Below are positions 14,501-63,411 of a stretch of DNA of 64,000 nt, piece after piece (the stretch's first letter is position 1; every line of letters starts with the position of its first letter). Location of the stretch: assembly GCA_002269645.1 (NCBI GenBank), contig NIVC01000573.1, forward strand, positions 248,001-312,000. The letters run 5' to 3'. The position numbers were made by a program, and so were the translations under genes. Under the pieces are notes generated by a model. It was not told the origin of the DNA. It worked only from the letters and a program-made list of their open reading frames with translations, and did not search any database. Source of the DNA: Macrostomum lignano (lineage: Eukaryota).

Positions 14501-17500
14501 CCAGTGGAGGGTATTGTAACACAGTGGAGGGGGGTTGTAGCTCAGTGGAGGGTTGTAGCCCAGTGGAGGGGGTTGTAGCCCAGTGGAGGGTATTGTAGCC
14601 CAGTGGAGGGGGGTTGTAGCTCAGTGGAGGGTTGTAGCCCAGTGGAGGGGGGTTGTAGCCCAGTGGAGGGGGGTTGCAGCCCAGTGGAGGGGGCTGTAGC
14701 CCAGTGGAGGGTTGTAGCCCAGTGGAGGGGGTTGCAGCCCAGTGGAGGGGGGTTGTAGCCCAGTGGAGGGTATTGTAACCCAGTGGAGGGGGGTTGTAGC
14801 TCAGTGAAGGGTTGTAGCCCAGTGGAGGGGGTTGTAGCCCAGTGGAGGGTATTTTAGCCCAGTGGAGGGGGGTTGTAGCTCAGTGGAGGGTTGTAGCCCA
14901 GTGGAGGGGGGTTGTAGCTCAGTGGAGGGTTGTAGCCCAGTGGAGGGGGGTTGTAGCCCAGTGGAGGGGGGTTGCAGCCCAGTGGAGGGGGCTGTAGCCC
15001 AGTGGAGGGGGGTTGTAGCTCAGTAGAGGGTTGTAGCCCAGTGGAGGGGGTTGTAGCTCAGTGGAGGGGGGTTGCAGCCCAGTGGAGGGTTGTAGCCCAG
15101 TGGAAGGGGGTTGTAGCCCAGTGGAGGGGGGTTGCAGCCCAGTGGAGGGGGCTTTAGCCCAGTGGAGGGGGGTTGTAGCTCAGTGGAGGGTTGTAGCCCA
15201 GTTGAGGGGGTTGTAGCTCAGTGGAGGGGGTTGTAGCTCAGTGGAGGGGGGTTGCAGCCCAGTGGAGGGTAATTTAGCCCAGTGGTTAAAGCGTTGGACT
15301 TACGACTTGAAAATCGGGGGTTCGATTCCCGATCCCACTCGGAACAATTTGTGTCCTTGACCGAGACGCTTAACTCTGCATTGCTTCAGTTCTCCCAGCT
15401 GTAAAATGGGTGCCAGAATTAACTTGGGTAATTGAGGGTGTGTGTGGGCGACCCGGTTACACATCTGGCCCAAACGGGGCAGGAGTAATCAATCAAGAAA
15501 CCGGCCCTGGCCGTAGCAACTGGGTTTGACTTCACTTTCGTTAGCCAAGAGCTGACGATGCTGTGACATTTCGCAGTGCATTCAATTCCACCTCTTTGCC
15601 GGACAATGACACCGTGGGAAGTCAAACTCACCTGTGAGCTCCATACCGGACAAGGCGGACGCTGCCAGGCTCATGGCTCTTTGCCTGGCAACTGGCGGCC
15701 CGATCGGACTGTCGCCATCCCTGTCTGTTTGAGGCGTCTGCGGCGACAGCGGTAGCGGGTTGGCTGCGGCAGCCGGATGCTGGGAGCTCTGGCCTGCCGC
15801 TGCTGCAGTGTCGTTGAGGTTGGGTCATGGGTTATGCTTAGAGTAGCAAATTAGCTAAGAGTAGCAACGGGGAGCCATAGATTAGCAATAAGGGAAGCCA
15901 TAGATTAGCAACAGGAGCCATAGATTAGCAACGGGGAGCCATAGATTAGCAACGGGGAGCCATAGATTAGCAACGGGGGGAGCCATAGATTAGCAACGGG
16001 GAGCCATAGATTAGCAAGCCACCTCAGATTTAGAACGCAATGAACGCAGCAAAGCAGCCAATTCAAACTGGGATAATTAGGAAAAAATACTGTGGAAGCA
16101 AAGTTAATTACTTCCAATTATTGAAGTTTCGGTCTATGGCATGGTTTGTCTACTTATAATAGCAGAAGAAGAATATTTTATTCCTTTTCTTATCCAGCAT
16201 GTTCAAATTTAACATCGAAATCTGATGGAACTCATTCAAATCTCATTTTCTGTATTAGAAAAACATCTGTAGGATAATTCTCAATAGAAAAGGCAGGAAA
16301 GCTGCTGAATTCATAAAAACTGCTAGCGCATCCATTATCATTGACAATTTTTGAATAAGCCACTCCAGATTACCCCCCCCCCCCTACTCAGACTACTCCC
16401 CTACTCAGAGAGCCGAAACAATGGCAGGCACACGAGGCACGCGGTAGTCTGTTTACGGAATCCAGCAGGGCATTGAATTCTGGGAATCTGCATCGGCGGC
16501 CTTGCCGCTTCAGCGGTCCCGGGAGGAAAAACATTTAAAACAAAAAGCAGAGCAGCTCAACGAAATTTCCCTTCCCCCCTTTTCAATAGAGATAATAAGA
16601 ATCCTCTTCCTCACGGAGCAGAGTCGGGATTTTTTTGGGGGGGGGGAATTGGCGACAGGCTGAGGGCGGAGCCGAGCTGGCAGATTCCTGCTAGAGGATC
16701 TGCATCCTTCTCATGCGGGCTGCCGGAGGCGAGCCGTGGAGCTCTGGAACCATGCTGTCTGGATTGGAAACAGCAGACTGGGCTAAGCACAAGCCGAAGC
16801 TGAAATTTCTACTCCTTGATTAAACTGCACTGAGTAGACTTACAAAATTTGTTATAAATTTAATGGCTTATTCAGAGGACGCCTTCACAAATCGGCAACT
16901 TCACTAGGGCTAGGGCTAGGGCTAGGATTAGGGTTAGGATTAGGGTTAGGGTTAGGATTAGGGTTAGGGTTAGGGTTAGGATTAGGATTAGGGTTAGGGT
17001 TAGGGTTAGGGTTAGGGCTACAGAAAGAGGTGCACCAACGCCCCTGGACTGCCGGCAATGCCGCGAGGCTGTCCCTGTCCTTTACCCGCCCTGCGCAGGG
17101 CCCTGCTTGGACTCAACCGCAAGGACATCAGGGCGTCGACCATGGCCTTCTCGGGTCATGACTGCCTTGCCAGGTATCGTCAGCTCCAGGGAAAATCCGC
17201 AGTGAGGAATGCCCCTTCTGCCTCTCCGGTGTCGAGAATGCGGAGCACCTCATCTGTGAACTCCCCGCCTTTACTCAGGACCGGCTCAGGACAGAACCCG
17301 GACCTCTCCGACGTTTTTAGGCCCGAGAATCTCTGCCAGCTCGTCCGCTACCTAAGGGCTACCGGGCGAGCGACAATCCACCTCCTGGACTCTCGGACAC
17401 CGGCACCACCGGATCTCCCTGCGCGACACCGCAGCACCAGCTGCGCGTGGTCGCCAGGGGTTAGCGAAATGGGCGGAAACGCCTCCTCGCTGCATCCGGA

Positions 17501-25103: not shown

Positions 25104-28100
25104 TTAACGACCCCCGCGGCGCCTGAAGCCCCGACCACCGCGTCTGAAGCCGCGACTCCTGGCACGCCTGAAGCCCCGACCACGGCGCCTGAAGCCACGA
25201 CCACCGCGCCTGAATCTCATTCTATGCCGCCGATAGAAGCGTCTGCGATGATGATTCCGTGAATGACCATGGCGGAATCTGCGAGAACGGCGTCGGTTCA
25301 GGACATAGTAGCGACGGTGGTTGTGTGGCCGTTTAGTCCACGAACTGGTTGTAGCTGGCTCCTCCGAGGGACTGGGTACTGCTGAGGTAACTGATACTGT
25401 GCTGGGAGTTGGAGTGGTGGTAACCTCTGGCTCGTTCGTGTCAGAAGCTTGAGTAGTCTCAGGCTTGATGGTGTCAGGAGCCGGAGTGGTTACAGGCTCT
25501 ATAGTGCCACTGGATGAAGTTGACGCAGGCTGATTGGTGTCAGGAGCTAGAGTACTCTCCGGCTTGACAGTATCAGGAGCCGGAGAGGTTGCAGGCTCAA
25601 CGGTCTCAGGTGCTGGAGTGGTTGCAGGCTCGACGGTCTCAGGATTCGGAGAGGTTGCAGTCTCGACGGTCTCAGGAGCTGGAGTGGTTGCAGGCTCGAC
25701 CGTGTCGGGAACTGGAGTGGTTGCAGGCTCAACGGTCTCAGGTGCTGGAGTGGTTGCAGGCTCGACGGTCTCAGGATCCGGAGAGGTTGCAGGCTCGACG
25801 GTATCAGGAGCTGGAGTGGTTGCAGGCTTGACGGTATCAGGAGCTGGAGTGGTTGCAGGCTCGACGGTCTCAGGAGATGGAGTGGTTGCAGGCTCGACGG
25901 TATCAGGAGCTGAAGTGGTTGCAGGCTCGACCGTGTCAGTAGATGGAGTGGTTGCAGGCTCAACGGTCTCAGGATCCGGAGAGGTTGTAGGCTCGACGGT
26001 CTCAGGATCCGGAGAGGTTGCAGTCTCGACGGTCTCAGGAGCTTGAGTGGTTGCAGGCTCGACCGTGTCAGGAACTGGAGTGGTTGCAGGCTCAACGGTC
26101 TCAGGTGCTGGAGTGGTTGCAGGCTCGATGGTCTCAGGATCCGGAGTAGTTGCAGGCTTGACGGTATCAGGAGCTGGAGTGGTTGCAGGCTTGACGGTAT
26201 CAGGAGCTGGAGTGGTTGCAGGCTCGACGGTCTCAGGAGATGGAGTGGTTGCAGGCTCGACGGTATCAGGAGCTGGAGTGGTTGCAGGCTCGACCGTGTC
26301 AGTAGATGGAGTGGTTGCAGGCTTAACGATTTCAGGATCCGCAGTGGTTGCAGTCTCGATGGTCTCAGGAGCTTGAGTGGTTGCAGGCTCGACGGTCTCA
26401 AGTGCTGGAGTGGTTGCAGGCTCAACGGTTTCAGGTGCTGGAGTGGTTGCAGGCTGGACGGTCTCAGGAGATGGAGTGGTTGCAGGCTCGACCGTGTCCG
26501 GATCCGGAGTGGTTGCAGGCTTGACGGTATCAGGAGCTGGAGTGGTTGCAGGCTCGACGGTATCAGGAGATGGAGTGGTTGCAGGCTTGACGGTCTCAGG
26601 AGCTGGAGTGGTTGCAGGCTTGACGGTATCAGGAGCTGGAGTGGTTGCAGGCTCGACGGTCTCAGGAGATGGAGTGGTTGCAGGCTTGACGGTCTCAGGA
26701 GCTGGAGTGGTTGCAGGCTCGACCGTGTCAGTAGATGGAGTGGTTGCAGGCTCAACGGTTTCAGGATCCGCAGTGGTTGCAGTCTCGACGGTCTCAGGAG
26801 CTTGAGTGGTTGCAGGCTCGACCGTGTCAGGAACTGGAGTGGTTGCAGGCTCAACGGTCTCAGGTGCTGGAGTGGTTGCAGGCTCGACGGTCTCAGGATC
26901 CGGAGAGGTTGCAGGCTCGACGGTATCAGGAGCTGGAGTGGTTGCAGGCTTGACGGTATCAGGAGCTAGAGTGGTTGCAGGCTCGACGGTCTCAGGAGAT
27001 GGAGTGGTTGCAGGCTCGACGGTATCAGGAGCTGGAGTGGTTGCAGGCTCGACCATGTCAGTAGATGGAGTGGTTGCAGGCTCAACGGTCTCAGGATCCG
27101 GAGAGGTTGCAGGCTCGACGGTCTCAGGATCCGGAGAGGTTGCAGTCTCGACGGTCTCAGGAGCTTGAGTGGTTGCAGGCTCGACCGTGTCAGGAACTGG
27201 AGTGGTTGCAGGCTCAACGGTCTCAGGTGCTGGAGTGGTTGCAGGCTCGATGGTCTCAGGATCCGGAGTAGTTGCAGGCTTGACGGTATCAGGAGCTGGA
27301 GTGGTTGCAGGCTTGACGGTATCAGGAGCTGGAGTGGTTGCAGGCTCGACCGTGTCAGTAGATGGAGTGGTTGCAGGCTCAACGGTTTCAGGATCCGCAG
27401 TGGTTGCAGGCTCGACGGTCTCAAGTGCTGGAGTGGTTGCAGGCTCGACGGTCTCAGGAGATGGAGTGGTTGCAGGCTCGACCGTGTCAGGAGCTGAAGT
27501 GGTTGCAGGCTCGACGGTCTCAGGATCCGGAGAGGTTGCAGGCTCGACGGTCTCAGAAGCCGGAGTGGTTGCAGGCTCCAGGGTCTCAGGATCTGGAGAT
27601 GTTGCAGTCTCGACGGTCTCAGGAGCTGGAGTGGTTGCAGGCTCAACCGTGTCAGGAGCTGGAGTGGTTGCAGGCTCGACCGTGTCAGGAGATGGAGTGG
27701 TTGCAGGCTTGACGGTATCAGGAGCTGGAGTGGTTGCAGGCTCGACCGTGTCAGGAGCTGGAGTGGTTGCAGGCTCAACGGTCTCAGGATCCGCAGTGGT
27801 TGCAGTCTCGACGGTCTCAGGATCCGAAGTGGTTGCAGGCTTGACGGTATCAGGTGCTGGAGTGGTTGCAGGCTCGACGGTCTCAGGTGCTGGAGTTGCT
27901 GCAGTCTCTGGCTTGATGGTCGCTGCAGCTGGAGTAGTTTGTACGGTTACAGTTGTTACCTCTGGCTCGACTGTATTAAGAGCTTCAAAGGTGCTTGATT
28001 CCGGCTGGCTTGTAGTAGGAGTAGTGCTCAAGTCGGTAGTAGTCTCAGTTGTCACTGGCTTAGCGGTGCTCAATCCGGAAGTGGCTTCAGGGGTCGCTGA

Positions 28101-28400
28101 AGCAGTCACAGTGGCCGGTTGCTCCGTGATGAAGCCGCAGTTGATGATGACCCCGGCCTTCAACCCTTCAACGTACGCTATCTTGCCAGCCTCGCTGGCG
28201 CAGGTGTTGGAGCTCGGGAACGAGGCGCAGAAGTCAATCAGTCTCTGCTGGCTGTAGACGCCAATGCAGGACTCGCACAGTTTGATTCGCGGCTTGTTGA
28301 AGCACTCGTCCAGGGTGACGGACTCGGCTGGTGGCAGCAGCCTGCTGTCGGCCATGACGGAGGCCGCCAGCAGCAGCAGGTTCAGCCAGTTCGGTCGCAT
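25104..28400 (-). CDS. Intronless secreted mucin-like protein (1098 aa): signal peptide, small 6-Cys domain, about 74 x 11-aa PATTPAPETVE repeats, and a 76-aa Arg-rich C-terminal tail
   Basis: Uninterrupted ORF from ATG (28400) to TAA (25104). N-terminus MRPNWLNLLLLAASVMA is hydrophobic and signal-like. The 33-bp unit stays in frame and varies mostly at synonymous or conservative positions. Unique sequence lies on both sides of the repeat in the same frame. Confidence 0.88.
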   Translation of the reverse strand: MRPNWLNLLLLAASVMADSRLLPPAESVTLDECFNKPRIKLCESCIGVYSQQRLIDFCASFPSSNTCASEAGKIAYVEGLKAGVIINCGFITEQPATVTASATPEATSGLSTAKPVTTETTTDLSTTPTTSQPESSTFEALNTVEPEVTTVTVQTTPAAATIKPETAATPAPETVEPATTPAPDTVKPATTSDPETVETATTADPETVEPATTPAPDTVEPATTPAPDTVKPATTPSPDTVEPATTPAPDTVEPATTPAPETVETATSPDPETLEPATTPASETVEPATSPDPETVEPATTSAPDTVEPATTPSPETVEPATTPALETVEPATTADPETVEPATTPSTDTVEPATTPAPDTVKPATTPAPDTVKPATTPDPETIEPATTPAPETVEPATTPVPDTVEPATTQAPETVETATSPDPETVEPATSPDPETVEPATTPSTDMVEPATTPAPDTVEPATTPSPETVEPATTLAPDTVKPATTPAPDTVEPATSPDPETVEPATTPAPETVEPATTPVPDTVEPATTQAPETVETATTADPETVEPATTPSTDTVEPATTPAPETVKPATTPSPETVEPATTPAPDTVKPATTPAPETVKPATTPSPDTVEPATTPAPDTVKPATTPDPDTVEPATTPSPETVQPATTPAPETVEPATTPALETVEPATTQAPETIETATTADPEIVKPATTPSTDTVEPATTPAPDTVEPATTPSPETVEPATTPAPDTVKPATTPAPDTVKPATTPDPETIEPATTPAPETVEPATTPVPDTVEPATTQAPETVETATSPDPETVEPTTSPDPETVEPATTPSTDTVEPATTSAPDTVEPATTPSPETVEPATTPAPDTVKPATTPAPDTVEPATSPDPETVEPATTPAPETVEPATTPVPDTVEPATTPAPETVETATSPNPETVEPATTPAPETVEPATSPAPDTVKPESTLAPDTNQPASTSSSGTIEPVTTPAPDTIKPETTQASDTNEPEVTTTPTPSTVSVTSAVPSPSEEPATTSSWTKRPHNHRRYYVLNRRRSRRFRHGHSRNHHRRRFYRRHRMRFRRGGRGFRRRGRGFRRARSRGFRRGGRGFRRRGGR

Positions 28401-30309: not shown

Positions 30310-32210
30310 ATGTCAACTCCTAGTGACTCCAGTGCGTCGAACCTACCGCCTCCTCCACCGACGGAGCAACCTCCGTTACCGGTCGTCAGCCAGCCCAGCG
30401 GCGTTGCTTCACCACCGGCGATAAGCCCGCCTAGCACCACCGCCGCGGCACCGTCGATTAGCCAGCCCAGCGTCCTTTTCTCGCCGGCTGCGATGCCGCC
30501 TTACCAGCAGGCTGTGGCTGCCGTCAGCGTCAAAGCCCCGCCGTTCTATCGCAACAACCCAGACGCTTGGTTCCAGACGCTGGAATCTCAGTTTAAGTTA
30601 GCCCGCATCACATCCGAGGAAACAAAGTACCATCACCTCGTGTCCAACCTGCCAGAAGACGTCGCATCTGTTCTCCTGTCGTCTGAGACTCCTGCCAACT
30701 ACACTCTACTGAAGACCAGCGTCTGCAACATGATGCAGAAGAGTAAGCAGGAGAAGATTAACGAACTTCTGGCGACATCGGACCTCGGCGGCGACAAGCC
30801 CTCGATTTTTCTACAACGCCTCACAGCCAAGATGTCGCAATGCGGGATACAACCAGCCAGCTGCCCGGACATGGTCAAAGCCACGCTGTTGCGCTGCCTA
30901 CCGAGCGAATTCCGCCTGGCCTTGTCTGGATTCCAGGAACAGACTCCAGCACAGCTCGCCTCCATCGCCGACTCGATGTTCACCGTCCAGAATTCATTCG
31001 GTCGGGTCAACGCAGCGCAACCAGAGCTCATCGCGGCTGTACCAGCAAAACCAACCGGTGACTTCAACAAGGCTCGGAAAACTAGAAGCAAAGCAGGCCG
31101 TTCAAAGCAGGTCAACGCCCCGTCATCTGCCGCGCTCATATCTTCTACGGCCAACAAGCGCGTACCTGCCGCCACTGGTGCCAGTTTCCAAAGGCACCCA
31201 GTCACTTCCCGCGCGTCCTTACGAACAACGAGGCGACGCCAGCGCAATCGCGATCATCGTCACCAACGCGAAACAGCCCAACTCCGGGAAACTGGACGAC
31301 ACTGCCCAACACGCCGCAGTGAGCAGCGTCAGCCGAGGAAATGCGGCGACGAAGCACTTCCTGGTGGTGGACCTCACATTCAACGGTCAATGTCTGTCCT
31401 TCCTCGTCGACACAGGAGCGGAGCCGCTGTGTCCATCATTCCGCCAAAGTATCTCCACCAGGCTCTTCAGGCTACCGGTTACAGATTGACTACCGCCACC
31501 GGCACGTCCATTCCGGTTTCTGGAGAGATCACTCTCACCGTCTCCATCCGAGGACTTCGTCGATCCTTTCAGTGGACCTTCCTCGTCGCCGCCGTCATCC
31601 AGCCGATCCTTGGTTATGACTTACTATCCCGGTACGGTCTTTTAGTTGACTGCAAGGCACGACAACTGGTGGATCCAGAAACTACGCTGCACACGCAGAC
31701 TCTACCTGTCACCAGCCTGCAGCTTGACAGCTTCGCCGTCTCCCTGGCATATCCCGAGCATTGCGATCCGAGAGTGCAACAGCTCATCGATCGTTTTGCC
31801 GACACCTTCTCGTACGTCGAAGGTGGTCGCCTGCCTAGAGCTGAGGAGGTTAAACACAACACGAAGCACCACATCATCACCAACGAGCATCCTCCGACAC
31901 ATGCCAAAGCGCGACAGCTACATCCCGAGAAGCTTGCCATAGCCAAGGACGAGTTCCAGCAGCTGATCGACGCAGGATACCTTCGGCCTTCCGCCAGCAA
32001 CTGGGCATCAGCTCTTCATATGGTTCCCAAGAAGGACAACGGTGTACCTAACGGAAAATGGCGACCCTGCGGTGATTACCGGCAGCTCAACAAGTTGACC
32101 AAACCGGACAACTATCCTATTCCGCACATCCAGTGCTTCACAAGGAGTCTTCACGGTGCAAGGATCTTCTCGAAGCTGGACCTCGTACGAGCGTACCACC
32201 AGATTCCGAC
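30310..32210 (+). mobile_element. Ty3/gypsy LTR retrotransposon of the CsRn1 lineage: gag, protease and N-terminal RT, truncated at about 32210
   Basis: Gag [28 protein letters not shown]...[10 protein letters not shown]. Gag CHCC motif [18 protein letters not shown] (C-x2-H-x9-C-x3-C) in an alternate frame near 31125-31185. Protease [49 protein letters not shown]. Compensating frameshifts; no YxDD, RNase H or integrase. Confidence 0.92.
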
Positions 32211-32330
32211 ATAGACAATCGGGCGTTAAATGTCATTAACTGCCCGCTAATTTGCATGAAAGTAAGTTTGACATAGACAATCGGGCGTTAAATGTCATTA
32301 ACTGCCCGCTAATTTGCATTAAAGTAAGTT
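32209..32330. repeat. 62-bp direct tandem duplication at the gypsy truncation point
   Basis: ACATAGACAATCGGGCGTTAAATGTCATTAACTGCCCGCTAATTTGCAT(G/T)AAAGTAAGTTT occurs twice. Confidence 0.85.
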
Positions 32331-43172: not shown

Positions 43173-44972
43173 ATGGCCTTCTCATTCAACTTCCAAATTG
43201 ACCCTAAGGATATTGGCAATGATATTGAAAGTTTTAAAATTTCAACTAGCTGTGAAAATCAGGCTAACAAAAGCAAATCTACAGGCCTAATATCAGATAA
43301 GTCATCAGGTCAATTGAAGGAGCTCAGCCTAGAGCTAGATGAACTGCCAGTATGTGAGGATGATGTTGTGACCTCAGTGCAGCTGCTAAAGGGATCAACT
43401 AACCCCAATGCATCTGTCAGCTACTATTGTCCTGAGGAGGTCAGCCTATGGGCCAAGGCGAATGACCTGATGCCTATAGACTCTGAGCAAAGCACTGACT
43501 TGGTTAGTCTATATTTTGGTATTGCTTTTTTATTTGCTACTGAGGAAAATGGAAAGAAATTAGGCCACAGTTTACCCCTAAAGTTACAAGTTTGCAAGCT
43601 TTGCAAGTTTTGAAATTATGAATAATTATCTCAATGAGAGTTTTTTTAATTTGTGCAATCTCACTGAGAGTCTGTTTGGATGTATGCAATCTCACTGAGA
43701 GTCTGTTTAAATGTATGCAATCTCACTGAGAGTCTGTTTAAATGTGTGCAATCTCACTGGGAGTCTGTTTGTGTGCAATCTCACTGAGAGTCTGTTTGTG
43801 TGCAACCTTACTGAGTGACATCAATTAAAAGCATCTCCCTAACTGCTAGGTAAGCAACCTCACTGGGTGACACCAATTAAAAGCAGCTCCCTAACTGCTA
43901 GGTAAGCAACCTCACTGAGTGACACCAATTAAAAGCAGCTCCCTAACTGCTAGGTAAGCAACCTCACTGAGTGACACCAATTAAAAGCAGCTCCCTAACT
44001 GCTAGGTAAGCAACCTCACTGAGTGACACCAATTAAAAGCAGCTCCCTAACTGCTAGGTAAGCAACCTCACTGGGTGACACCAATTAAAAGCAGCTCCCT
44101 AACTGCTAGGTAAGCAACCTCACTGAGTGACACCAATTAAAAGCAGCTCCCTAACTGCTAGGTAAGCAACCTCACTGAGTGACACCAATTAAAAGCAGCT
44201 CCCTAACTGCTAGGTAAGCAACCTCTCTGAGTGACACCAATTAAAAGCATCTCCCTAACTGCTAGGTAAGCAACCTCACTGGGTGACACCAATTAAAAGC
44301 ATCTCCCTAACTGCTAGGTAAGCGGCGTGTACGAAGGCGGCTTGCAGCTGTGGGAGTGCTCGGAAGACTTGGCCAAATGGCTGCTGGACAAGGCGGAGCT
44401 GCAGCCGGGTCTCCGAGTGATGGAGCTGGGCTGCGGAGCTGGACTGCCTGGGCTGAGCTGCCTGAGAAGGCACCGGCCAGTGAAGGTGGCCTTTCAGGTG
44501 AGGTGTCCGTGAAGTTTCACAGTGGTTCACAAAATTTGCAATTTTATCCCTTGTCACTTCATTCTCTTCTCAGGACTTCAACCCGGAAGTGCTCCGAGCC
44601 TGGACGATGCCGAACTGCCGGTTAAACCTCGCCGATCTGGCGCGGCCGCCGCAGCTGGAGTTCCTGGCCGGCAGCTGGGCCGGCCTGGCGGCTTGGGAGG
44701 CGGCGCGCGGCGCCTTCGATCTGGTGCTGACAGCTGAGACTATTTACAATCCCGACTATTACCAGCAGCTCCACGACGCGCTAAGCCATCTGCTGGCCCC
44801 GGACGGTGTCGCTCTGGTTGCCGCCAAGGTCAGCTACTTCGGCGTCGGCGGCTCCGAGTCTTTGTTTTGCGACTTCCTCGACCGTCGCGGCCAGTTCAGC
44901 CACTCGACTGCCATGCGCACGGAGTCGGCGGCTCTGGCCCGAGTGATTCTTGAGCTGCGGCGGCGGCGGTGA
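43173..44972 (+). CDS. METTL18: Histidine protein methyltransferase 1 homolog. Exons 43173-43502, 44318-44497, 44574-44972
   Basis: MAFSFNF N-terminus. Spliced STDL|VSGVYEGGLQLWEC; motif I VMELGCGAGLPGL; FQ|DFNPEVL; FDLVLTAETIYNPDYY; ALVAAKVSYFGVGGS. All junctions are phase 0 and GT-AG. Confidence 0.93.
43625..43802. repeat. About 27-31-bp tandem repeat (TGCAATCTCACTGAGAGTCTGTTT...) in METTL18 intron 1
   Basis: About 6 units seen directly; shares CAA(T/C)CTCACTGAG with the adjacent 52-bp array. Confidence 0.85.
43803..44323 (+). repeat. 52-bp tandem array containing the branch point, acceptor AG and first 6 exon nt of METTL18 exon 2
   Basis: Unit GTAAGCAACCTCACTGAGTGACACCAATTAAAAGCAGCTCCCTAACTGCTAG. 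AG|GTAAGC junctions at 43850, 43902, 43954, 44006, 44058, 44110, 44162, 44214, 44266 and 44318. Confidence 0.95.
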
Positions 44973-44999
44973 CCGGTTCTGATTCCATCGCATTCTCAT

Positions 45000-45385
45000 T
45001 ATCCGTGCAATTCCCCTCATTATTGATGGAATTCCCCTTATTATCAGTGCAATTCACTTCATTATCCATGGAATGTCCCTCATCCACGAAATCCACGAAA
45101 TTCCCTTGAATATCCTTGGAATTCCCTCATTAACCATGGAATTTCCCTCATTATCCATAGAATTTCCCTCAATATCCATGGAATTCCCCTCAACATTCAT
45201 GGAATTCTACTCATTCATGGAATACCCCTCGTTATCCATTATCTCATTATCCATGGAATTCCCCTCAATATCCATGGAATTTCCCTCATTACCCATGGAA
45301 TTCCCCTCAATATCCATGGAATTCCCCTCAATATCCAAGGAATTTCCCTTATTATCCATGGAATTTCCCTCGATATCCATGGAGT
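45000..45385. repeat. 21-bp minisatellite (AATTCCCCTCAATATCCATGG)n starting about 30 nt after the METTL18 stop codon
   Basis: About 17 degenerate units. Confidence 0.88.
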
Positions 45386-45699
45386 TCCTGAATTGTAAAG
45401 TCCTCCAACCTAAGCCTAAAATCTCACTTTTCGTAGAGTCCTTTTCCGGTATGAAAATAAATTGCAATTATGATATTGTTAAAGGTTGTTATGACATTTC
45501 TGGCAAAGTTTGCTCTGCTGGTGCAATTTTAGCAAAATTTTATTAATAAATAAAAATTGCAGCCAAGCCCAGGCTCTGGCAATTATTTGCGAGGCTCTGT
45601 GCATTTTTTACCTTGTCTGGCAGCATTTATATTTTATTGAGTAAAATTGGGCTGAAATATACTTTTCATCCTGCACTTCCTCTCCTTATCTTTCCTATC

Positions 45700-46500
45700 A
45701 GACTTTCCCTCTCCCTATGTCCCTCTCCCCCATCTCCCGGTCCCTCATCTCCCTCTATTATCCCTATCTCCCTAATCGCTCTCCTCAATCTCCCTCTCCC
45801 CCATCTCCCTCTCCCCATCTCCCTCTCCCCCATCTCCCTCTCCCCATCTCCCTCTTCCCCTCTCCCTCTCCCTCATCTCCCTCTCCCCATCTCCCTCTGC
45901 CTCATCTCCCTCTCCCCCATCTCCCTCTCCCCCATCTCCCTCTACCCCATCTCCCTCTCCCCCATCTCCCTCTCCCCATCTCCCTCTTCCCCTCTCCCTC
46001 TCCCCATCTCCCTCTTCCCCTCTCCCTCTGCCTCATCTCCCTCTCCCCCATCTCCCTCTCCCCATCTCCCTCTTCCCCTCTCCCTCTCCCCATCTCCCTC
46101 TTCCCCTCTCCCTCTGCCTCATCTCCCTCTCCCCCATCTCCCTCTCCCCATCTCCCTCTTCCCCTCTCCCTCTCCCTCATCTCCCTCTTCCCCTCTCCCT
46201 CTCCCCATCTCCCTCTTCCCCTCTCCCTCTGCCTCATCTCCCTCTCCCCCATCTCCCTCTCCCCATCTCCCTCTTCCCCTCTCCCTCTCCCTCATCTCCC
46301 TCTTCCCCTCTCCCTCTCCCTCATCTCCCTCTCCCCATCTCCCTCTGCCTCATCTCCCTCTCCCCCATCTCCCTCTCCCCAACTCCCTCTCCCCATCTTC
46401 CTCTCAGCGTTTGTCCATCTCCTCTCGTTCCCCTCTCTCTCTCTCCCCTACTCCTCTCTGTCCATCGTTCTCTCCCTGGCTCTCCTTTCTCCCTTCGCCC
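45700..46500. repeat. Polypyrimidine-rich low-complexity repeat (CATCTCCCTCTCCC)n upstream of PHYH
   Basis: Direct reading. Confidence 0.9.
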
Positions 46501-57943: not shown

Positions 57944-60877
57944 ATGGCTTCGTCTGCCGAATTACTCAACGGAACTCTACAGGAGCTGAAGACGCAGATC
58001 CGGGGAACCAACGAATCCCTGGACTCCTTCTTCTTGTGCACCATGGCCATTGTCGTGTACTTCATGCAGTGCGGCTTCGCCTTTCTGGAGGCGGGCGCCG
58101 TTCGTTCGAAAAATACTACAAACATCCTGATCAAGAACATCCTGGACTCGTTCATCGGCGGCATCGCCTATTACGTAATCGGCTACGGCCTGGCGTTCGG
58201 AGCTCCGAACGGAAACCCGTTCTGCGGCAGCGGCTACTTTGCCATGTCCTACCTGCCCGAATCGAAGTTCTCCCACTGGTTCTTCCAGTTCGTCTTTGCC
58301 GCCACTGCTTCAACAATTGTTTCTGGGGCCGTAGCAGAGAGGTGTGACTTCAAGGCCTACATAGCCTACTCCTTTGTTATCACAGGTGAGTAACAGAGAG
58401 ATTTTTCACAAACGAGTGAGTAGCCCACGACAAAGTTAATTAAGGAAACTAACTTTCACTTGACGCATCAAACTGCAGGCTTTCTCTACCCCATTGTGTC
58501 GCACTGGGTCTGGGACACAGGCGTTGGCTGGCTGTCGGTCAGCATCACCGCCCACAACGGCGCTCTGGCCTCCACTTTTCACGTGAGTGATCTGGCTTAA
58601 TTCTGCCGTTGGCCTACAGTTTGGGACAAAATCAAATTTCTGAGATTAGATCCTGACTGACAATCAGAGAAACAAATATCTGATAGAATCACTCCATCAT
58701 CTCCGAATGCTCACAGGATTTCGCCGGCTCCGGAGTCGTCCACGTCACCGGAGGCTGCGCAGCTTTCGTGGCGGCGGCCATCCTCGGCCCGCGAATCGGA
58801 CGCTTCGACGACGAAACCAAGAAGCCGCTCGATATCCGCGGCCACTCGGTGCCGCTCGCCTCTCTCGGCGGCTTCATCCTGTTCTTCGGCTTCTTCGCCT
58901 TCAACGGCGGCAGCCAGCTATCGATCTCGAATTCAAGCGACGGCTCTGTCGTGGCCATCGCGATGGTCAACACGATCCTCAGCGGCAGCGTCGCTGCCTT
59001 TGTCACCCTGCTGCTCGGGCGCATCCGCGGACCGCACTGGTCGCTGCTGCAGACAATCAACGGCGGCCTGGCCGGCATGGTGGCCATCTGCGCCGGCTGC
59101 GACGTCGTGTATCCGTGGGGCGCCTGCATCATCGGCTTCTTCGCCGCCATCTCCTACACCTGCTGGTCCATGCTGCTGCTGGCGCTCAAGATATCGACGA
59201 CCCGCTTGACGCGGTGGCCGTGCACTACGGCGGAGGTCTCTGGGGCGTCATCGCGGTAGCCTTCCTGCACCGCAGCCGGGGCATCGTGATGACCTTCGAC
59301 CAGCAGAGCGGACTCTTCCTGGCCGTGCAGCTCGTCGGCGTTCTGGCCATCACGGCGTGGAGCGGCGGCGTCTCCATCATCGTGTTCGGCATCCTTCGCC
59401 TGCTCAAGGTGTTCCGAGTCAGCAGGGAGTACGAGATCAAAGGTGAGAAGCTTAATATTGATTATGAAACTTTTTGGTTTTAATCAGTGTGATTCCGACC
59501 AAGACTAAGTCAAAGGACGGAGTTCGTTGAATATGGTTGATCTGTATTCCAATTTGGTTATAAAGACGATTTTTGGAGTTTTTCGATTGCCAGCTTTGTG
59601 GGATGTGAATGACTAAGTTTGCTTGTTTTGCTGGTGTTTTGGCAGACAGTTCCTATTATTTTCAATTTTATTAACCTCTACAGGTCTTGACTTTCCAAAG
59701 CATGGAGAAATGGCCTATCCTCTGACCTCGTACGGCCATGGTTGGAAAGAAGGTGAGTGAGCTTTCGGCTCCAGGTGCCATACCTGCATCTAATGTAAAT
59801 CGGCTTTAAACATAGCTCGTAGTTTTTAATATAGCTTTTTGCAGCCCATTTGGGCTTACGCGCATTGAATTTAACCCAAGATATGTTTGTCAAAGTAATG
59901 GAGCTTTTGTCTATGGTAGCAAGGCTGGCACAGCGGCATTTAATTTGGTCCAACAAGCATCAATTTGGTCCATTTAGTTCATTTGCAGCTCAGTCCCAGA
60001 ATTGTGGACCATATGCTAGGCTGTGGAACGAATGTCATTGGCTTGTGATCGAAGCACTCGACGGAGGTAAACACCCAAAGGACATTGCAAGGTTGCTGAA
60101 TGTAAAAGAAAAGGTGGTTTACAGCATCCAGCAGCGCCTTGAAACTCTGCCGGCAGAGATTGCCTGCGAAAGGGTGGCAATCGCCAAGGAAAGTTGCTCG
60201 AGAGCCTCAGGTCCAACTGCTACTCGATGCAGTGGAGACGAACCCTTTGTTGACGTTTCAGAAAATGCAGCAGAAGTTGAGGGAACAGCTCCAGTTGGTT
60301 ATCAGATTTCGACTATCAGCAGAGCTCTGGAAAAGTAACTGAAAATTGCTGGTAGAGACGCTGACATTCCAGCGGTGCGAACAACCTGCAGACGGTTGAG
60401 AGAAGGCAAGAGTTTGTCCAATGGCTCACGAGTGTTTGGACCAAATGGATGCTTTTTGGACCAAATTAAATGCCGCTGCGCCAGCCTTGCTACCATAGAC
60501 AAAAGCTCCGTTACATTGGCAAACGTATCTTGGATTAAATTAAATGCGCGTAAGCCCAAATGGGCTGCAAAATGCTATATTTGTCTTTTAATCCGTAGCT
60601 CGCATTGGTGACATTTGAAAATTTTCAATGCTGATCTAACGCATTGAAACGGCATAACTAGGCATAACTAAACTAACTGTAACTGATGGTACAAATCAGG
60701 GTTTAGCAAACAACTGATCCTATTGCCATCGTTTTAGACAATGTTGTGCCGGAGATCGGAGCCACAGAGATGCTGCCCGAGGTGCTCATCAACTACGACC
60801 GTTTCCATAACATGACTCGCCACCATCAGCTCAAAGGAACTCAAAACGACGCTGTGGAAGATGCTACTGCTATGTGA
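57944..60877 (+). CDS. amt: Ammonium transporter (Amt family), copy 1. Exons 57944-58385, 58479-58582, 58717-59442, 59684-59752, 60738-60877
   Basis: FMQCGFAFLEAGAVRSKNTTNILIKN; WFFQFVFAA..TIVSGAVAER; YPIVSHWVW; DFAGSGVVH; GPRIGRF; GFFAFNGGS; NGGLAGMVAICAG; IDDPLDAVAVH; GLDFPKHGEMAY. Twin His retained. Frameshift near 59188-59193 (AAGATATCGACGAC, an extra AT). Confidence 0.93.
59830..60579 (+). mobile_element. Non-autonomous Tc1/mariner-like element in Amt intron 4: about 140-bp TIRs, TA flanks, N-terminal HTH remnant
   Basis: 59832-59971 and 60438-60577 are imperfect inverted repeats, both flanked by TA. Internal frames give VIEALDGGKHPKDIARLLNVKEKVVYSIQQR and LLDAVETNPLLTFQKMQQKL...STISRAL (paired HTH-like). 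No DDE/D domain. Confidence 0.78.
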
Positions 60878-62969: not shown

Positions 62970-63411
62970 ATGGCTTCGTCTGCCGAATTACTCAACGGAA
63001 CTCTACAGGAGCTGAAGACGCAGATCCGGGGAACCAACGAATCCCTGGACTCCTTCTTCTTGTGCACCATGGCCATTGTCGTGTACTTCATGCAGTGCGG
63101 CTTCGCCTTTCTGGAGGCGGGCGCCGTTCGTTCGAAAAATACTACAAACATCCTGATCAAAAACATCCTGGACTCGTTCATCGGCGGCATCGCCTATTAC
63201 GTAATCGGTTACGGCCTGGCGTTCGGAGCTCCGAACGGAAACCCGTTCTGCGGCAGCGGCTACTTTGCCATGTCCTACCTGCCCGAATCGAAGTTCTCCC
63301 ACTGGTTCTTCCAGTTCGTCTTTGCCGCCACTGCCGCTACGATCGTTTCCGGTGCTGTGGCAGAGAGGTGCGAGTTCCTGGCTTACATCACCTACTCCTT
63401 CATCATTACGG
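62970..63411 (+). CDS. amt: Ammonium transporter, copy 2, exon 1 only (the rest would lie beyond the window)
   Basis: 442-nt exon, same length and phase-1 donor (G|gtgagc) as copy 1; near-identical protein start MASSAELLNGTLQELK. Confidence 0.9.

What the first reader, a model, noticed from the sequence alone, without database searches (positions are those of the whole stretch)
43803..44497. Chain of nine 52-nt mini-introns with zero-length exons (recursive-splicing-like array) in METTL18 intron 1
Seen: the unit starts with a strong donor GTAAGC, carries a CCCTAAC branch-point motif 5 nt before TAG, and ends in the acceptor. The array therefore makes ten consecutive AG|GTAAGC junctions exactly 52 nt apart. 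The tenth (44318) is the real exon 2, whose coding start GTA AGC (Val-Ser of DL-VSGVYEGG) is itself donor-like. Retaining any unit adds an in-frame stop (GTA AGC AAC CTC ACT GAG/GGG TGA). Established: AG|GT sites drive recursive splicing in Drosophila and vertebrates, and tandem duplication across an AG|GT site is a proposed route of intron gain. Inference: functional mRNA needs either the most distal of ten equivalent acceptors or stepwise removal of up to nine 52-nt introns. Copy number could tune METTL18 output through NMD, and re-use of the 44318 donor could skip the in-frame 180-nt exon carrying the SAM-binding ELGCGAG motif. The 52-nt unit is shorter than the other introns seen here (72, 76, 76 and 93 nt).
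Basis: partly seen in the sequence, partly recalled or inferred. Interest (0 to 1): 0.85.

Follow-up and report, generated by a model that had tools for sequence, protein, structure and literature searches.

The report
Minisatellite copying a splice junction
In a flatworm methyltransferase gene, a 52-base piece spanning the end of intron 1 and the first six bases of exon 2 is repeated ten times in tandem; this is a known kind of repeat ("mirage" minisatellite), and nothing available here shows that its extra splice sites are used.

Summary
A 52-nt unit is repeated 10.0 times at 97% identity (43802-44323). It gives ten AG|GTAAGC junctions exactly 52 nt apart, and the last one is the true start of exon 2. 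The gene is the METTL18/HPM1 homologue of Macrostomum lignano (assembly GCA_002269645.1, contig NIVC01000709.1).

The array is the 3' part of a compound intronic minisatellite. It sits in a window where 27% of the sequence is tandem repeat. Its unit formed by unequal exchange between GTGTGC, at the end of an older 27-31-nt repeat, and GTAAGC, the first six bases of exon 2.

The closest known kind is the "mirage" minisatellite of amphioxus, a tandem duplication of an intron/exon boundary. RT-PCR there showed no interference with normal splicing.

The special feature here is that the six copied exon bases form a near-consensus donor. Each unit is therefore formally both an acceptor|donor ratchet site and a 52-nt poison exon.

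Recursive splicing, NMD tuning and exon-2 skipping are logically possible. They could not be tested: no transcript, close relative or second gene copy could be retrieved.

Most likely this is a young, near-neutral repeat, with splicing to the distal acceptor. Interest is modest.

The parts
43173..43502 (+). METTL18/HPM1 coding exon 1 (MAFSFNFQ...SEQSTDL), followed by donor TTG|GTTAGT
   Evidence: The N-terminal motif M-x-F-x-F-N-F and the ..SDL end align with orthologues. ORF and donor were read.
43503..43629 (+). Unique AT-rich 5' part of intron 1 (about 30% GC)
   Evidence: It shows no similarity to exon 2 beyond the donor hexamer.
43630..43806 (+). Older intronic minisatellite: six units of 27-31 nt (CTCACTGAG AGTCTGTTT.. 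TGCAAY)
   Evidence: TRF 43628-43815, period 31. The register alignment shows that it shares GCAAY+CTCACTGAG (14 nt) with the 52-nt unit.
43798..43849 (+). Founder copy of the 52-nt unit. It starts GTGTGC (no good donor) and ends in the first CTAACTGCTAG acceptor.
   Evidence: It is the most diverged copy (CTTACTGAG, GACATC, GCATCT), as expected for an array edge.
43850..44317 (+). Nine 52-nt units GTAAGC..CCCTAACTGCTAG. Each is bounded by AG|GTAAGC and each has an in-frame TGA at codon 7 when read from GTA.
   Evidence: The CTGGG variant in units 1, 5 and 9, and 3/260 mismatches at lag 208 against 7/416 at lag 52, suggest a four-unit higher-order duplication.
44318..44497 (+). Exon 2 (180 nt, VSGVYEGG...ELGCGAG...VAFQ). 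Its first six bases, GTAAGC, are the 3' end of the repeat. Its donor is CAG|GTGAGG.
   Evidence: The invariant residues Y115 E116 G117 G118 W122 E123 and E146-A151 lie in this exon.
44498..44573 (+). Intron 2 (76 nt), with a pyrimidine-rich acceptor
   Evidence: pyrimidine fraction 0.85 over -23..-4, against 0.50-0.55 for the repeat acceptors.
44574..44972 (+). Exon 3 through the stop codon (DFNPEV...LELRRRR*)

Best explanation
This is a young 'mirage'-type minisatellite: a tandem duplication of an intron/exon boundary. It lies in the METTL18/HPM1 gene of the flatworm Macrostomum lignano.

Origin (inferred). An unequal exchange or replication slip joined GTGTGC, at the end of the last unit of a pre-existing 27-31-nt intronic minisatellite, to GTAAGC, the first six bases of exon 2. 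This created a 52-nt unit made of the last 46 nt of the intron plus those six exon bases. Further unequal exchanges, including one of four units, raised it to ten copies.

Why it is tolerated (shown by the sequence). All extra copies lie upstream of the intact exon, so the coding sequence is untouched.

Splicing (inferred). Productive splicing joins 43502 to 44318, the only acceptor followed by the GC-rich exon and by its donor 180 nt downstream. The nine decoys are mostly ignored. Occasional use of a decoy has two possible outcomes. It can be rescued, because the junction TTG|GTAAGC regenerates a donor at least as good as the authentic GTTAGT. Otherwise it yields stop-containing RNA that is lost.

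I assign the array no dedicated function.
For: - Array anatomy and its junction with the older repeat.
- Edge copies carry GCATCT and interior copies carry GCAGCT, the usual pattern of homogenised tandem arrays.
- 27% of the window is tandem repeat in about 30 arrays. Only this one carries AGGTRAG, which is explained by its having been seeded on a real splice junction.
- The species was identified from the contig record and from papers. Tandem and simple repeats are 15% of that genome (PMC5730564).
- The reading frame and all invariant family residues are intact.
- Precedent: amphioxus mirages with units of 10-72 bp and 150-160 bp vary in copy number, and RT-PCR showed no effect on regular splicing (PMC3087553).
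- Donor comparison against the U1-complementary consensus: the authentic TTG|GTTAGT has a longest contiguous match of 3, and the regenerated TTG|GTAAGC has 6.
- There is no RNA structure signal (z = +0.78) and no Rfam match.
Against: - There is no RNA evidence of any kind, so which acceptor is used and how efficiently is inferred only.
- All ten acceptors have identical upstream sequence for at least 46 nt. The preference for the last one rests only on downstream exon context.
- The decoy donors look stronger than the authentic donor, so interference or re-splicing may be substantial rather than occasional.
- The assembly is of a neopolyploid, and other copies of the gene could not be examined. 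This copy could be a crippled one.
Confidence: 0.6

Rival explanations
1. The array works as a chain of recursive splice sites. Exon 1 is first joined to an upstream AG, the regenerated GTAAGC donor is then used again, and splicing ratchets to exon 2. Copy number sets how much RNA is lost to NMD or to skipping of exon 2.
For: - Ten perfect acceptor|donor junctions.
- The regenerated donor is better than the authentic one.
- Each unit is also a roughly 50-nt cryptic exon flanked by a downstream donor, which is the architecture described for ratchet points (PMC8605326).
- From eight of the nine decoys the true acceptor is at least 104 nt away, so rescue would not need a 52-nt intron.
- Exon 2 qualifies as an annotated 'RS-exon' of the kind the EJC protects from skipping (PMC6224609).
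Against: - The intron is 815 nt, whereas ratchet points sit mainly in very long introns and are ultraconserved. The array is young (97% identity).
- The only YTNAY motif in the last 40 nt of a unit is CTAAC at -8. The same motif is at -27 and -29 in two other introns here.
- No intron shorter than 76 nt could be verified in the window.
- Amphioxus mirages splice normally.
- No RNA data are available.
Confidence: 0.15
2. The decoy acceptors compete effectively, and this gene copy is a hypomorph on its way to becoming a pseudogene. It is tolerated because M. lignano is a neopolyploid with redundant gene copies.
For: - The upstream context of all ten acceptors is identical.
- Every decoy leads to a stop codon.
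- The Mlig_3_7 assembly holds 180 Mb of duplicated blocks that are at least 95% identical, and 79% of BUSCO genes are duplicated (PMC10468722).
- No protein from this gene is present in two very large protein libraries. Coverage of this species there is clearly sparse, so this point is weak.
Against: - The ORF is intact, with all invariant residues.
- Exons 2-3 keep GC3 of about 0.8.
- No frameshift or stop codon is present.
Confidence: 0.15
3. The repeated acceptors serve as spliced-leader trans-splice sites. The Macrostomum SL ends in AUG and the intron is phase 0. SL joined at 44318 would therefore read AUG|GUA AGC GGC.. and give an N-terminally truncated enzyme with the whole methyltransferase domain. 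SL joined at a decoy would give a 7-codon upstream ORF.
For: - 38.8% of M. lignano genes are SL trans-spliced (PMC5730564).
- The SL probably ends in the start codon ATG (PMC10468722).
- The frame was checked from the sequence.
Against: - Exon 1 has a usable donor upstream, so cis-splicing should outcompete trans-splicing.
- Exon 1 carries the conserved N-terminal motif.
- No SL-containing read could be examined.
Confidence: 0.04
4. The array, or its copy number, is an assembly artefact of the long-read assembly.
For: - Tandem arrays are error-prone in assemblies.
- The amphioxus BflGb6 mirage was mis-assembled in the draft genome.
Against: - 520 nt is far shorter than long reads.
- The units carry structured variants (GGG in units 1, 5 and 9; T in units 0, 8 and 9; CTCTCT in unit 8). 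They are not identical collapsed copies.
Confidence: 0.05

Closest known systems
[quoted passage not shown] 2002, cited in Ebner et al. 2010, PMC3087553)
   Same: - The tandem repeat unit consists of the 3' end of an intron plus the 5' start of the next exon.
- Units are in the same size range (Adh3 10-72 bp).
- Many units carry AG/GT signals.
- Interior copies are homogenised and edge copies diverged.
- The authentic exon follows the last copy.
   Different: - The phylum differs (flatworm rather than cephalochordate).
- Only six exon bases are copied here, and they happen to form a near-consensus donor. Every unit is therefore a complete acceptor|donor junction.
- The array grew out of an older, unrelated intronic minisatellite.
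- Splicing and length polymorphism, both shown in amphioxus, are untested here.
Recursive splice sites / ratchet points and RS-exons (Hatton 1998; Duff 2015; Sibley 2015; Joseph 2018 and 2021, PMC8605326; Blazquez 2018, PMC6224609)
   Same: - Acceptor and donor are juxtaposed (YAG|GTAAG).
- A roughly 50-nt cryptic exon with a stop codon is flanked by a further donor.
- A donor is regenerated after the first ligation.
- Exon 2 itself begins with a donor-like hexamer, as annotated RS-exons do.
   Different: - The intron is short (815 nt) rather than tens to hundreds of kb.
- There are ten identical sites 52 nt apart, not a single conserved site.
- The sequence is young, not ultraconserved.
- There is no evidence of intermediates.
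Introns born from tandem arrays in human genes (Zhuo et al. 2007, PNAS 104:882; reference seen in PMC3488318; paper not held, content from my own knowledge)
   Same: Repeat units each carry both splice signals, so arrays offer many alternative donor-acceptor pairs.
   Different: Those arrays lie in exons or UTRs and create new alternative introns. Here the array lies inside an existing intron and duplicates its real acceptor.
Novel intron positions by tandem duplication across a proto-splice site, and 'near intron pairs' (Rogers 1989; Lehmann et al. 2010, PMC2891723)
   Same: - The duplication spans an AG|GT site.
- Intron 1 here lies 19 nt from the position conserved in four protostome orthologues, which makes it a near intron pair.
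   Different: I found no trace that the intron itself arose by duplication. The intron 5' end shows no significant similarity to the exon 2 5' end, and the exon 1 3' end shows none to the unit.

Membership tests
Mirage minisatellite (tandem duplication of an intron/exon boundary) | Head-to-tail repeat whose unit spans an intron/exon boundary | tested here: met
   The array 43802-44323 ends 6 nt inside exon 2. Exon 2's start is fixed by orthologue alignment.
Mirage minisatellite (tandem duplication of an intron/exon boundary) | The authentic exon stays intact and the coding sequence is unaffected | tested here: met
   The 302-aa ORF keeps all invariant residues and has no indel at the junction.
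Mirage minisatellite (tandem duplication of an intron/exon boundary) | Length instability or polymorphism between haplotypes | not testable with these tools
   Only one copy of the locus could be read. Look-ups of exon ORFs found no other contig.
Mirage minisatellite (tandem duplication of an intron/exon boundary) | Regular splicing is maintained | not testable with these tools
   No transcript or close relative is present in either protein library.
Recursive splice site / ratchet point | Juxtaposed acceptor and donor (YAG|GTRAGT-like) | tested here: met
   CTAG|GTAAGC occurs ten times. As a donor it matches 8 of 11 consensus positions, with a contiguous run of 7.
Recursive splice site / ratchet point | Cryptic RS-exon (about 50 nt) with its own downstream donor | tested here: met
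   Each 52-nt unit is followed by the next GTAAGC. This is a formal match only.
Recursive splice site / ratchet point | Location in a long intron (tens of kb or more) | tested here: not met
   Intron 1 is 815 nt. The criterion is from PMC8605326. [quoted passage not shown]
Recursive splice site / ratchet point | Strong evolutionary conservation of the acceptor|donor motif | not testable with these tools
   No related Macrostomum locus is accessible. The 97% identity between units points to recent origin.
Recursive splice site / ratchet point | Splicing intermediates, lariats or a sawtooth RNA-seq profile | not testable with these tools
   No RNA data are available through these tools.
METTL18 / HPM1 protein-histidine methyltransferase | Methyltransf_16 fold with motif I (ELGCGAGLPG) and the family's YEGG..WEC block | tested here: met
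   PF10294 at E 2.7e-12. 187 library proteins score at E<=1e-30. Named hits are 'histidine protein methyltransferase 1 homolog'. Invariant columns are present.
Intron gained by tandem duplication across AG|GT (Rogers model) | The intron 5' end resembles the downstream exon start, and the intron 3' end resembles the upstream exon end | tested here: not met
   All comparisons are at chance level: p=0.58; nucleotide p>=0.6; amino-acid p about 0.2. Only the hexamers GTTAGT and GTAAGC are alike.

The most novel reading that the evidence does not exclude
The array is a self-correcting splice ratchet in a short intron. Every decoy acceptor is fused to a donor stronger than the gene's own, so a 'wrong' first choice is not a dead end. 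It is re-spliced towards exon 2. The number of units then sets the fraction of transcripts that end with a stop-containing unit or lose exon 2. That would make a hypervariable minisatellite a heritable dial on METTL18 output. It would also be the first case of recursive splicing at a tandem array, and the first in a flatworm.
Probability: 0.12. Interest if true: 0.65.

Novelty: new member of a known kind. Interest (0 to 1): 0.3.

Why it matters
If the plain reading holds, this extends 'mirage' minisatellites from amphioxus to a flatworm. It also gives an unusually clean natural construct: ten identical acceptors, each fused to a consensus-like donor, in front of one real exon.

Macrostomum lignano has working transgenesis and plenty of RNA-seq. 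The locus could therefore serve as a ready-made test of three questions:
- how a spliceosome picks among identical 3' splice sites;
- whether regenerated donors are re-used;
- how short an intron this animal can remove.

The locus also shows how repeat-rich genomes can multiply splice signals without breaking a gene. On its own, without RNA data, it is a curiosity rather than a discovery.

Tried and rejected
1. Repeat unit derived from the 3' end of exon 1 plus the donor. The local alignment score equals the chance expectation (p=0.58).
2. Intron 1 born by duplication, with its 5' end a decayed copy of the exon 2 start. Nucleotide alignments are at chance. The tempting amino-acid echo VS-LYFG versus VSGVYEG is not significant (p about 0.2).
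3. Structured RNA. Folding three units plus the exon start gives z=+0.78. There are no Rfam matches in the whole window.
4. The unit as a dispersed element. It has no copy elsewhere in the window.
5. Transcript or annotation evidence. No protein more than 50% identical exists among 5.8 billion clustered proteins or 1.84 billion representatives. Coverage of this species in those libraries is evidently sparse: only one 116-aa ORF from the contig turned up. Absence therefore says nothing about expression.
6. Homeologous copies. Exact-sequence look-ups of the exon 1 and exon 3 ORFs found nothing.
7. Look-up of the Tachypleus orthologue locus failed.
8. The original 'mirage' paper (PMC117041) and Zhuo et al. 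2007 (PMC1783408) are not held. They are cited second-hand or from my own knowledge.
Full report
**What is in the sequence**

Tandem Repeats Finder reports one array at 43802-44323 with period 52, 10.0 copies, 97% matches and no indels. The octamer AGGTAAGC occurs at 43848, 43900... 44316. That is ten sites exactly 52 nt apart, and none elsewhere in the window. The 31-nt core of the unit is found ten times, against zero in 100 dinucleotide-preserving shuffles.

Nine units of the form GTAAGC...CCCTAACTGCTAG fill 43850-44317. A more diverged founder copy at 43798-43849 begins GTGTGC. The tenth GTAAGC (44318) continues GGCGTGTACGAAGGCGGC, which is coding sequence.

**The gene and its junction**

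Joining 43173-43502, 44318-44497 and 44574-44972 gives a 302-aa protein. It matches Pfam Methyltransf_16 (PF10294, E 2.7e-12). Its best named relatives are 'histidine protein methyltransferase 1 homolog', that is METTL18/HPM1, at about 35-45% identity.

In an alignment with 11 orthologues the junction reads STDL|VSGVYEGG with no gap. A horseshoe-crab orthologue has the identical DLVSGVYEGG. The invariant Y-E-G-G, W-E and E-L-G-C-G-A residues all lie in exon 2. No other donor/acceptor pairing gives this sequence, so productive mRNA must join 43502 to 44318.

Retaining one, two or three units gives VSNLT(G/E)* or VSNLSE*. Omitting the 180-nt exon 2 keeps the frame.

**Which organism**

A 116-aa ORF of the window's ammonium-transporter gene is on record on contig NIVC01000709.1 of assembly GCA_002269645.1. 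The papers that hold these accessions identify it as the Mlig_3_7 assembly of the free-living flatworm Macrostomum lignano.

The genome paper reports the following (PMC5730564):
- Simple and tandem repeats are 15% of the genome.
- 180 Mb is in duplicated blocks at least 95% identical, because the species is a hidden polyploid.
- 38.8% of genes are SL trans-spliced.

The Macrostomum spliced leader probably ends in ATG (PMC10468722).

**Context of the array**

27% of the window is tandem repeat (25% with period of at least 10), in about 30 arrays. Among arrays with at least three copies, only the 52-nt one contains AGGTRAG on either strand.

In the register that starts at CTCACTGAG, intron 1 contains two repeat families:
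- six units of 27-31 nt (CTCACTGAG-AGTCTGTTT..-TGCAAY);
- then ten units of 52 nt (CTCACTGAG-TGACACCAATTAAAAGCAGCTCCCTAACTGCTAG-GTAA-GCAAC).

The two families share 14 nt (GCAAY+CTCACTGAG). In the last 52-nt unit GCAAC is replaced by GCGGC, which is exon.

The simplest history (inference) has three steps:
1. The intron once ended ..GTGTGC AAC CTTACTGAG TGACATC..CTAACTGCTAG|GTAAGC GGC.
2. An unequal exchange between GTGTGC and GTAAGC (four of six bases alike, ending in the shared GC) produced the first 52-nt duplication.
3. Later exchanges amplified it.

Three observations fit this history:
- Edge copies 0, 8 and 9 carry GCATCT, while the interior copies carry GCAGCT.
- The CTGGG variant recurs in units 1, 5 and 9.
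- Mismatches are fewer at lag 208 (3/260) than at lag 52 (7/416), which points to a four-unit duplication.

**Splice signals**

Against the U1-complementary consensus CAG|GTAAGTAT:
- The authentic donor TTG|GTTAGT has a longest contiguous match of 3.
- The donor regenerated when exon 1 is joined to any unit, or to exon 2 (TTG|GTAAGC), has a run of 6.
- The unit-to-unit donor TAG|GTAAGC has a run of 7.

The repeat acceptors are modest. Their pyrimidine fraction is 0.50-0.55 over -23..-4, against 0.85 for intron 2.

The only YTNAY motif in the last 40 nt of a unit is CTAAC, with its branch A 8 nt before the exon. The same CTAAC lies 27 nt before the exon in an ammonium-transporter intron (58386-58478, 93 nt). 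It lies 29 nt before a protocadherin exon (about 2161).

The two transporter introns (93 and 134 nt) are supported by an uninterrupted match of the spliced product to PF00909. No intron shorter than 76 nt could be verified in the window.

Whether a 52-nt unit can be removed on its own is therefore doubtful. From eight of the nine decoys, however, the true acceptor is at least 104 nt away, so re-splicing would not need such a short intron. That is arithmetic.

**What it most likely is**

The closest described phenomenon is the 'mirage' minisatellite of amphioxus. [quoted passage not shown] Many units carry AG/GT signals. Copy number differs between haplotypes and edge copies escape homogenisation. 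Adh3 data and globin RT-PCR indicated that regular splicing is not disturbed (PMC3087553).

The array here meets the two structural criteria that I could test. Its length polymorphism and its splicing could not be tested.

My best explanation (confidence about 0.6) is a young, near-neutral mirage. It is tolerated because all extra copies lie upstream of an intact exon. Splicing normally goes to the last acceptor, the only one followed by the GC-rich exon (64% GC against 46% in the array) and by a donor 180 nt downstream.

The array does reproduce the formal architecture of a ratchet point (PMC8605326):
- a tandem acceptor|donor;
- a roughly 50-nt cryptic exon with a stop codon;
- a further donor downstream.

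Exon 2 is also of the 'RS-exon' type that the exon junction complex protects from skipping (PMC6224609).

Against this, known ratchet points lie predominantly in very long introns and are ultraconserved, while this intron is 815 nt and the array is recent. The branch-point geometry is also unfavourable for 52-nt introns, and there are no RNA data. I give regular recursive use with copy-number tuning about 0.15.

**Other rivals**
- A crippled gene copy tolerated by polyploid redundancy (0.15).
- SL trans-splicing onto the acceptors (0.04). The SL's AUG would be in frame with exon 2 because the intron is phase 0.
- An assembly artefact (0.05). The structured variants among the units argue against it.

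**Evolution of the intron**

In a gastropod, an oyster, a nemertean and a tick, the corresponding intron lies in VYEG^G (phase 1, TAYGAAG|GT). The flatworm has no intron there. Its intron 1 lies 19 nt upstream, at DL|VS (phase 0).

Likewise its intron 2 (FQ|DF) lies 6 nt upstream of the conserved FQDY|N intron. The conserved LE^LGCG intron is absent.

These are 'near intron pairs' in the sense of Lehmann et al. (PMC2891723). I tested whether intron 1 shows traces of origin by duplication and found none.

**Limits**

Neither protein library contains a relative more than 50% identical. Exact look-ups of the exon ORFs found no other contig. There is therefore no transcript, paralogue or sister-species evidence.

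All statements about which splice sites are used are inference from sequence and from the amphioxus and recursive-splicing literature.

**Verdict**

This is a new member of a known kind (mirage minisatellite), with the neat extra that every copy is a complete acceptor|donor junction. Interest is 0.3.

Noticed in passing
43502/43503 and 44497/44498, compared with L001-L004: Both METTL18 introns sit close to, but not at, the positions conserved in four protostome orthologues. Intron 1 is 19 nt upstream of VYEG^G and intron 2 is 6 nt upstream of FQDY|N. The conserved LE^LGCG intron is missing. These are 'near intron pairs'.
   Followed up: partly
43173-43502 versus 44318-44972: There is a sharp composition jump inside one gene. 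Exon 1 has GC3 0.455, and exons 2 and 3 have GC3 0.78 and 0.80. The minisatellite-filled intron lies at the break. This is unexplained.
   Followed up: no
58386-58478; about 2129-2161; the 52-nt units: An exact CTAAC lies 27 and 29 nt before the exon in a transporter intron and a protocadherin intron, but only 8 nt before the exon in the repeat unit. From the CTAAC of one unit, the AG of CTGAG in the next unit is at about +25, the usual distance. That AG is absent in the CTGGG variants (units 1, 5 and 9).
   Followed up: partly
whole window: 27% of the 64 kb is tandem repeat, in about 30 arrays with periods mostly 13-68 nt and up to 78 copies. This includes long (ATAG)n and (TGTC)n tracts.
   Followed up: partly
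44995-45388: A 21-nt x 19 array (CTCATTATCCATGGAATTCCC) starts 23 nt after the METTL18 stop codon, so it is probably in the 3' UTR. A 29-nt x 24 C/T-rich array follows at 45706-46405.
   Followed up: no
1825-2058 and 2161: A protocadherin intron holds a 24-nt x 9.8 array whose units each contain CCTGTAG. The next exon, inferred from frame and a Cadherin match, also begins with GT (GTTACG).
   Followed up: partly
57944-59480 and 62970-63400: Two tandem ammonium-transporter (Amt) paralogues are present. In copy 1 the reading frame changes near 59190 (AAGAT[AT]CGACGAC, where K-I-D-D-P is expected). This is either a 2-nt insertion or an assembly error.
   Followed up: no
16905-17017: An interstitial telomere-like repeat, (TAGGGT) x 18.8, which is a permutation of TTAGGG.
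   Followed up: no
25104-28400 (minus strand): A 1098-aa open reading frame for a mucin-like Thr/Pro-rich protein. It is built from about 75 copies of a 33-nt (11-aa) coding repeat and has an Arg-rich tail.
   Followed up: no
30310-32214: A 634-aa gag-pol-like ORF, probably part of an LTR retrotransposon.
   Followed up: no
protein P0241 (from; not in the window): A 1535-aa predicted protein from an unknown organism contains 27 tandem copies of a methyltransferase motif-I segment (..RVLELGCGVGLTGL..). It looks like a tandemly amplified exon read through by a gene predictor.
   Followed up: no
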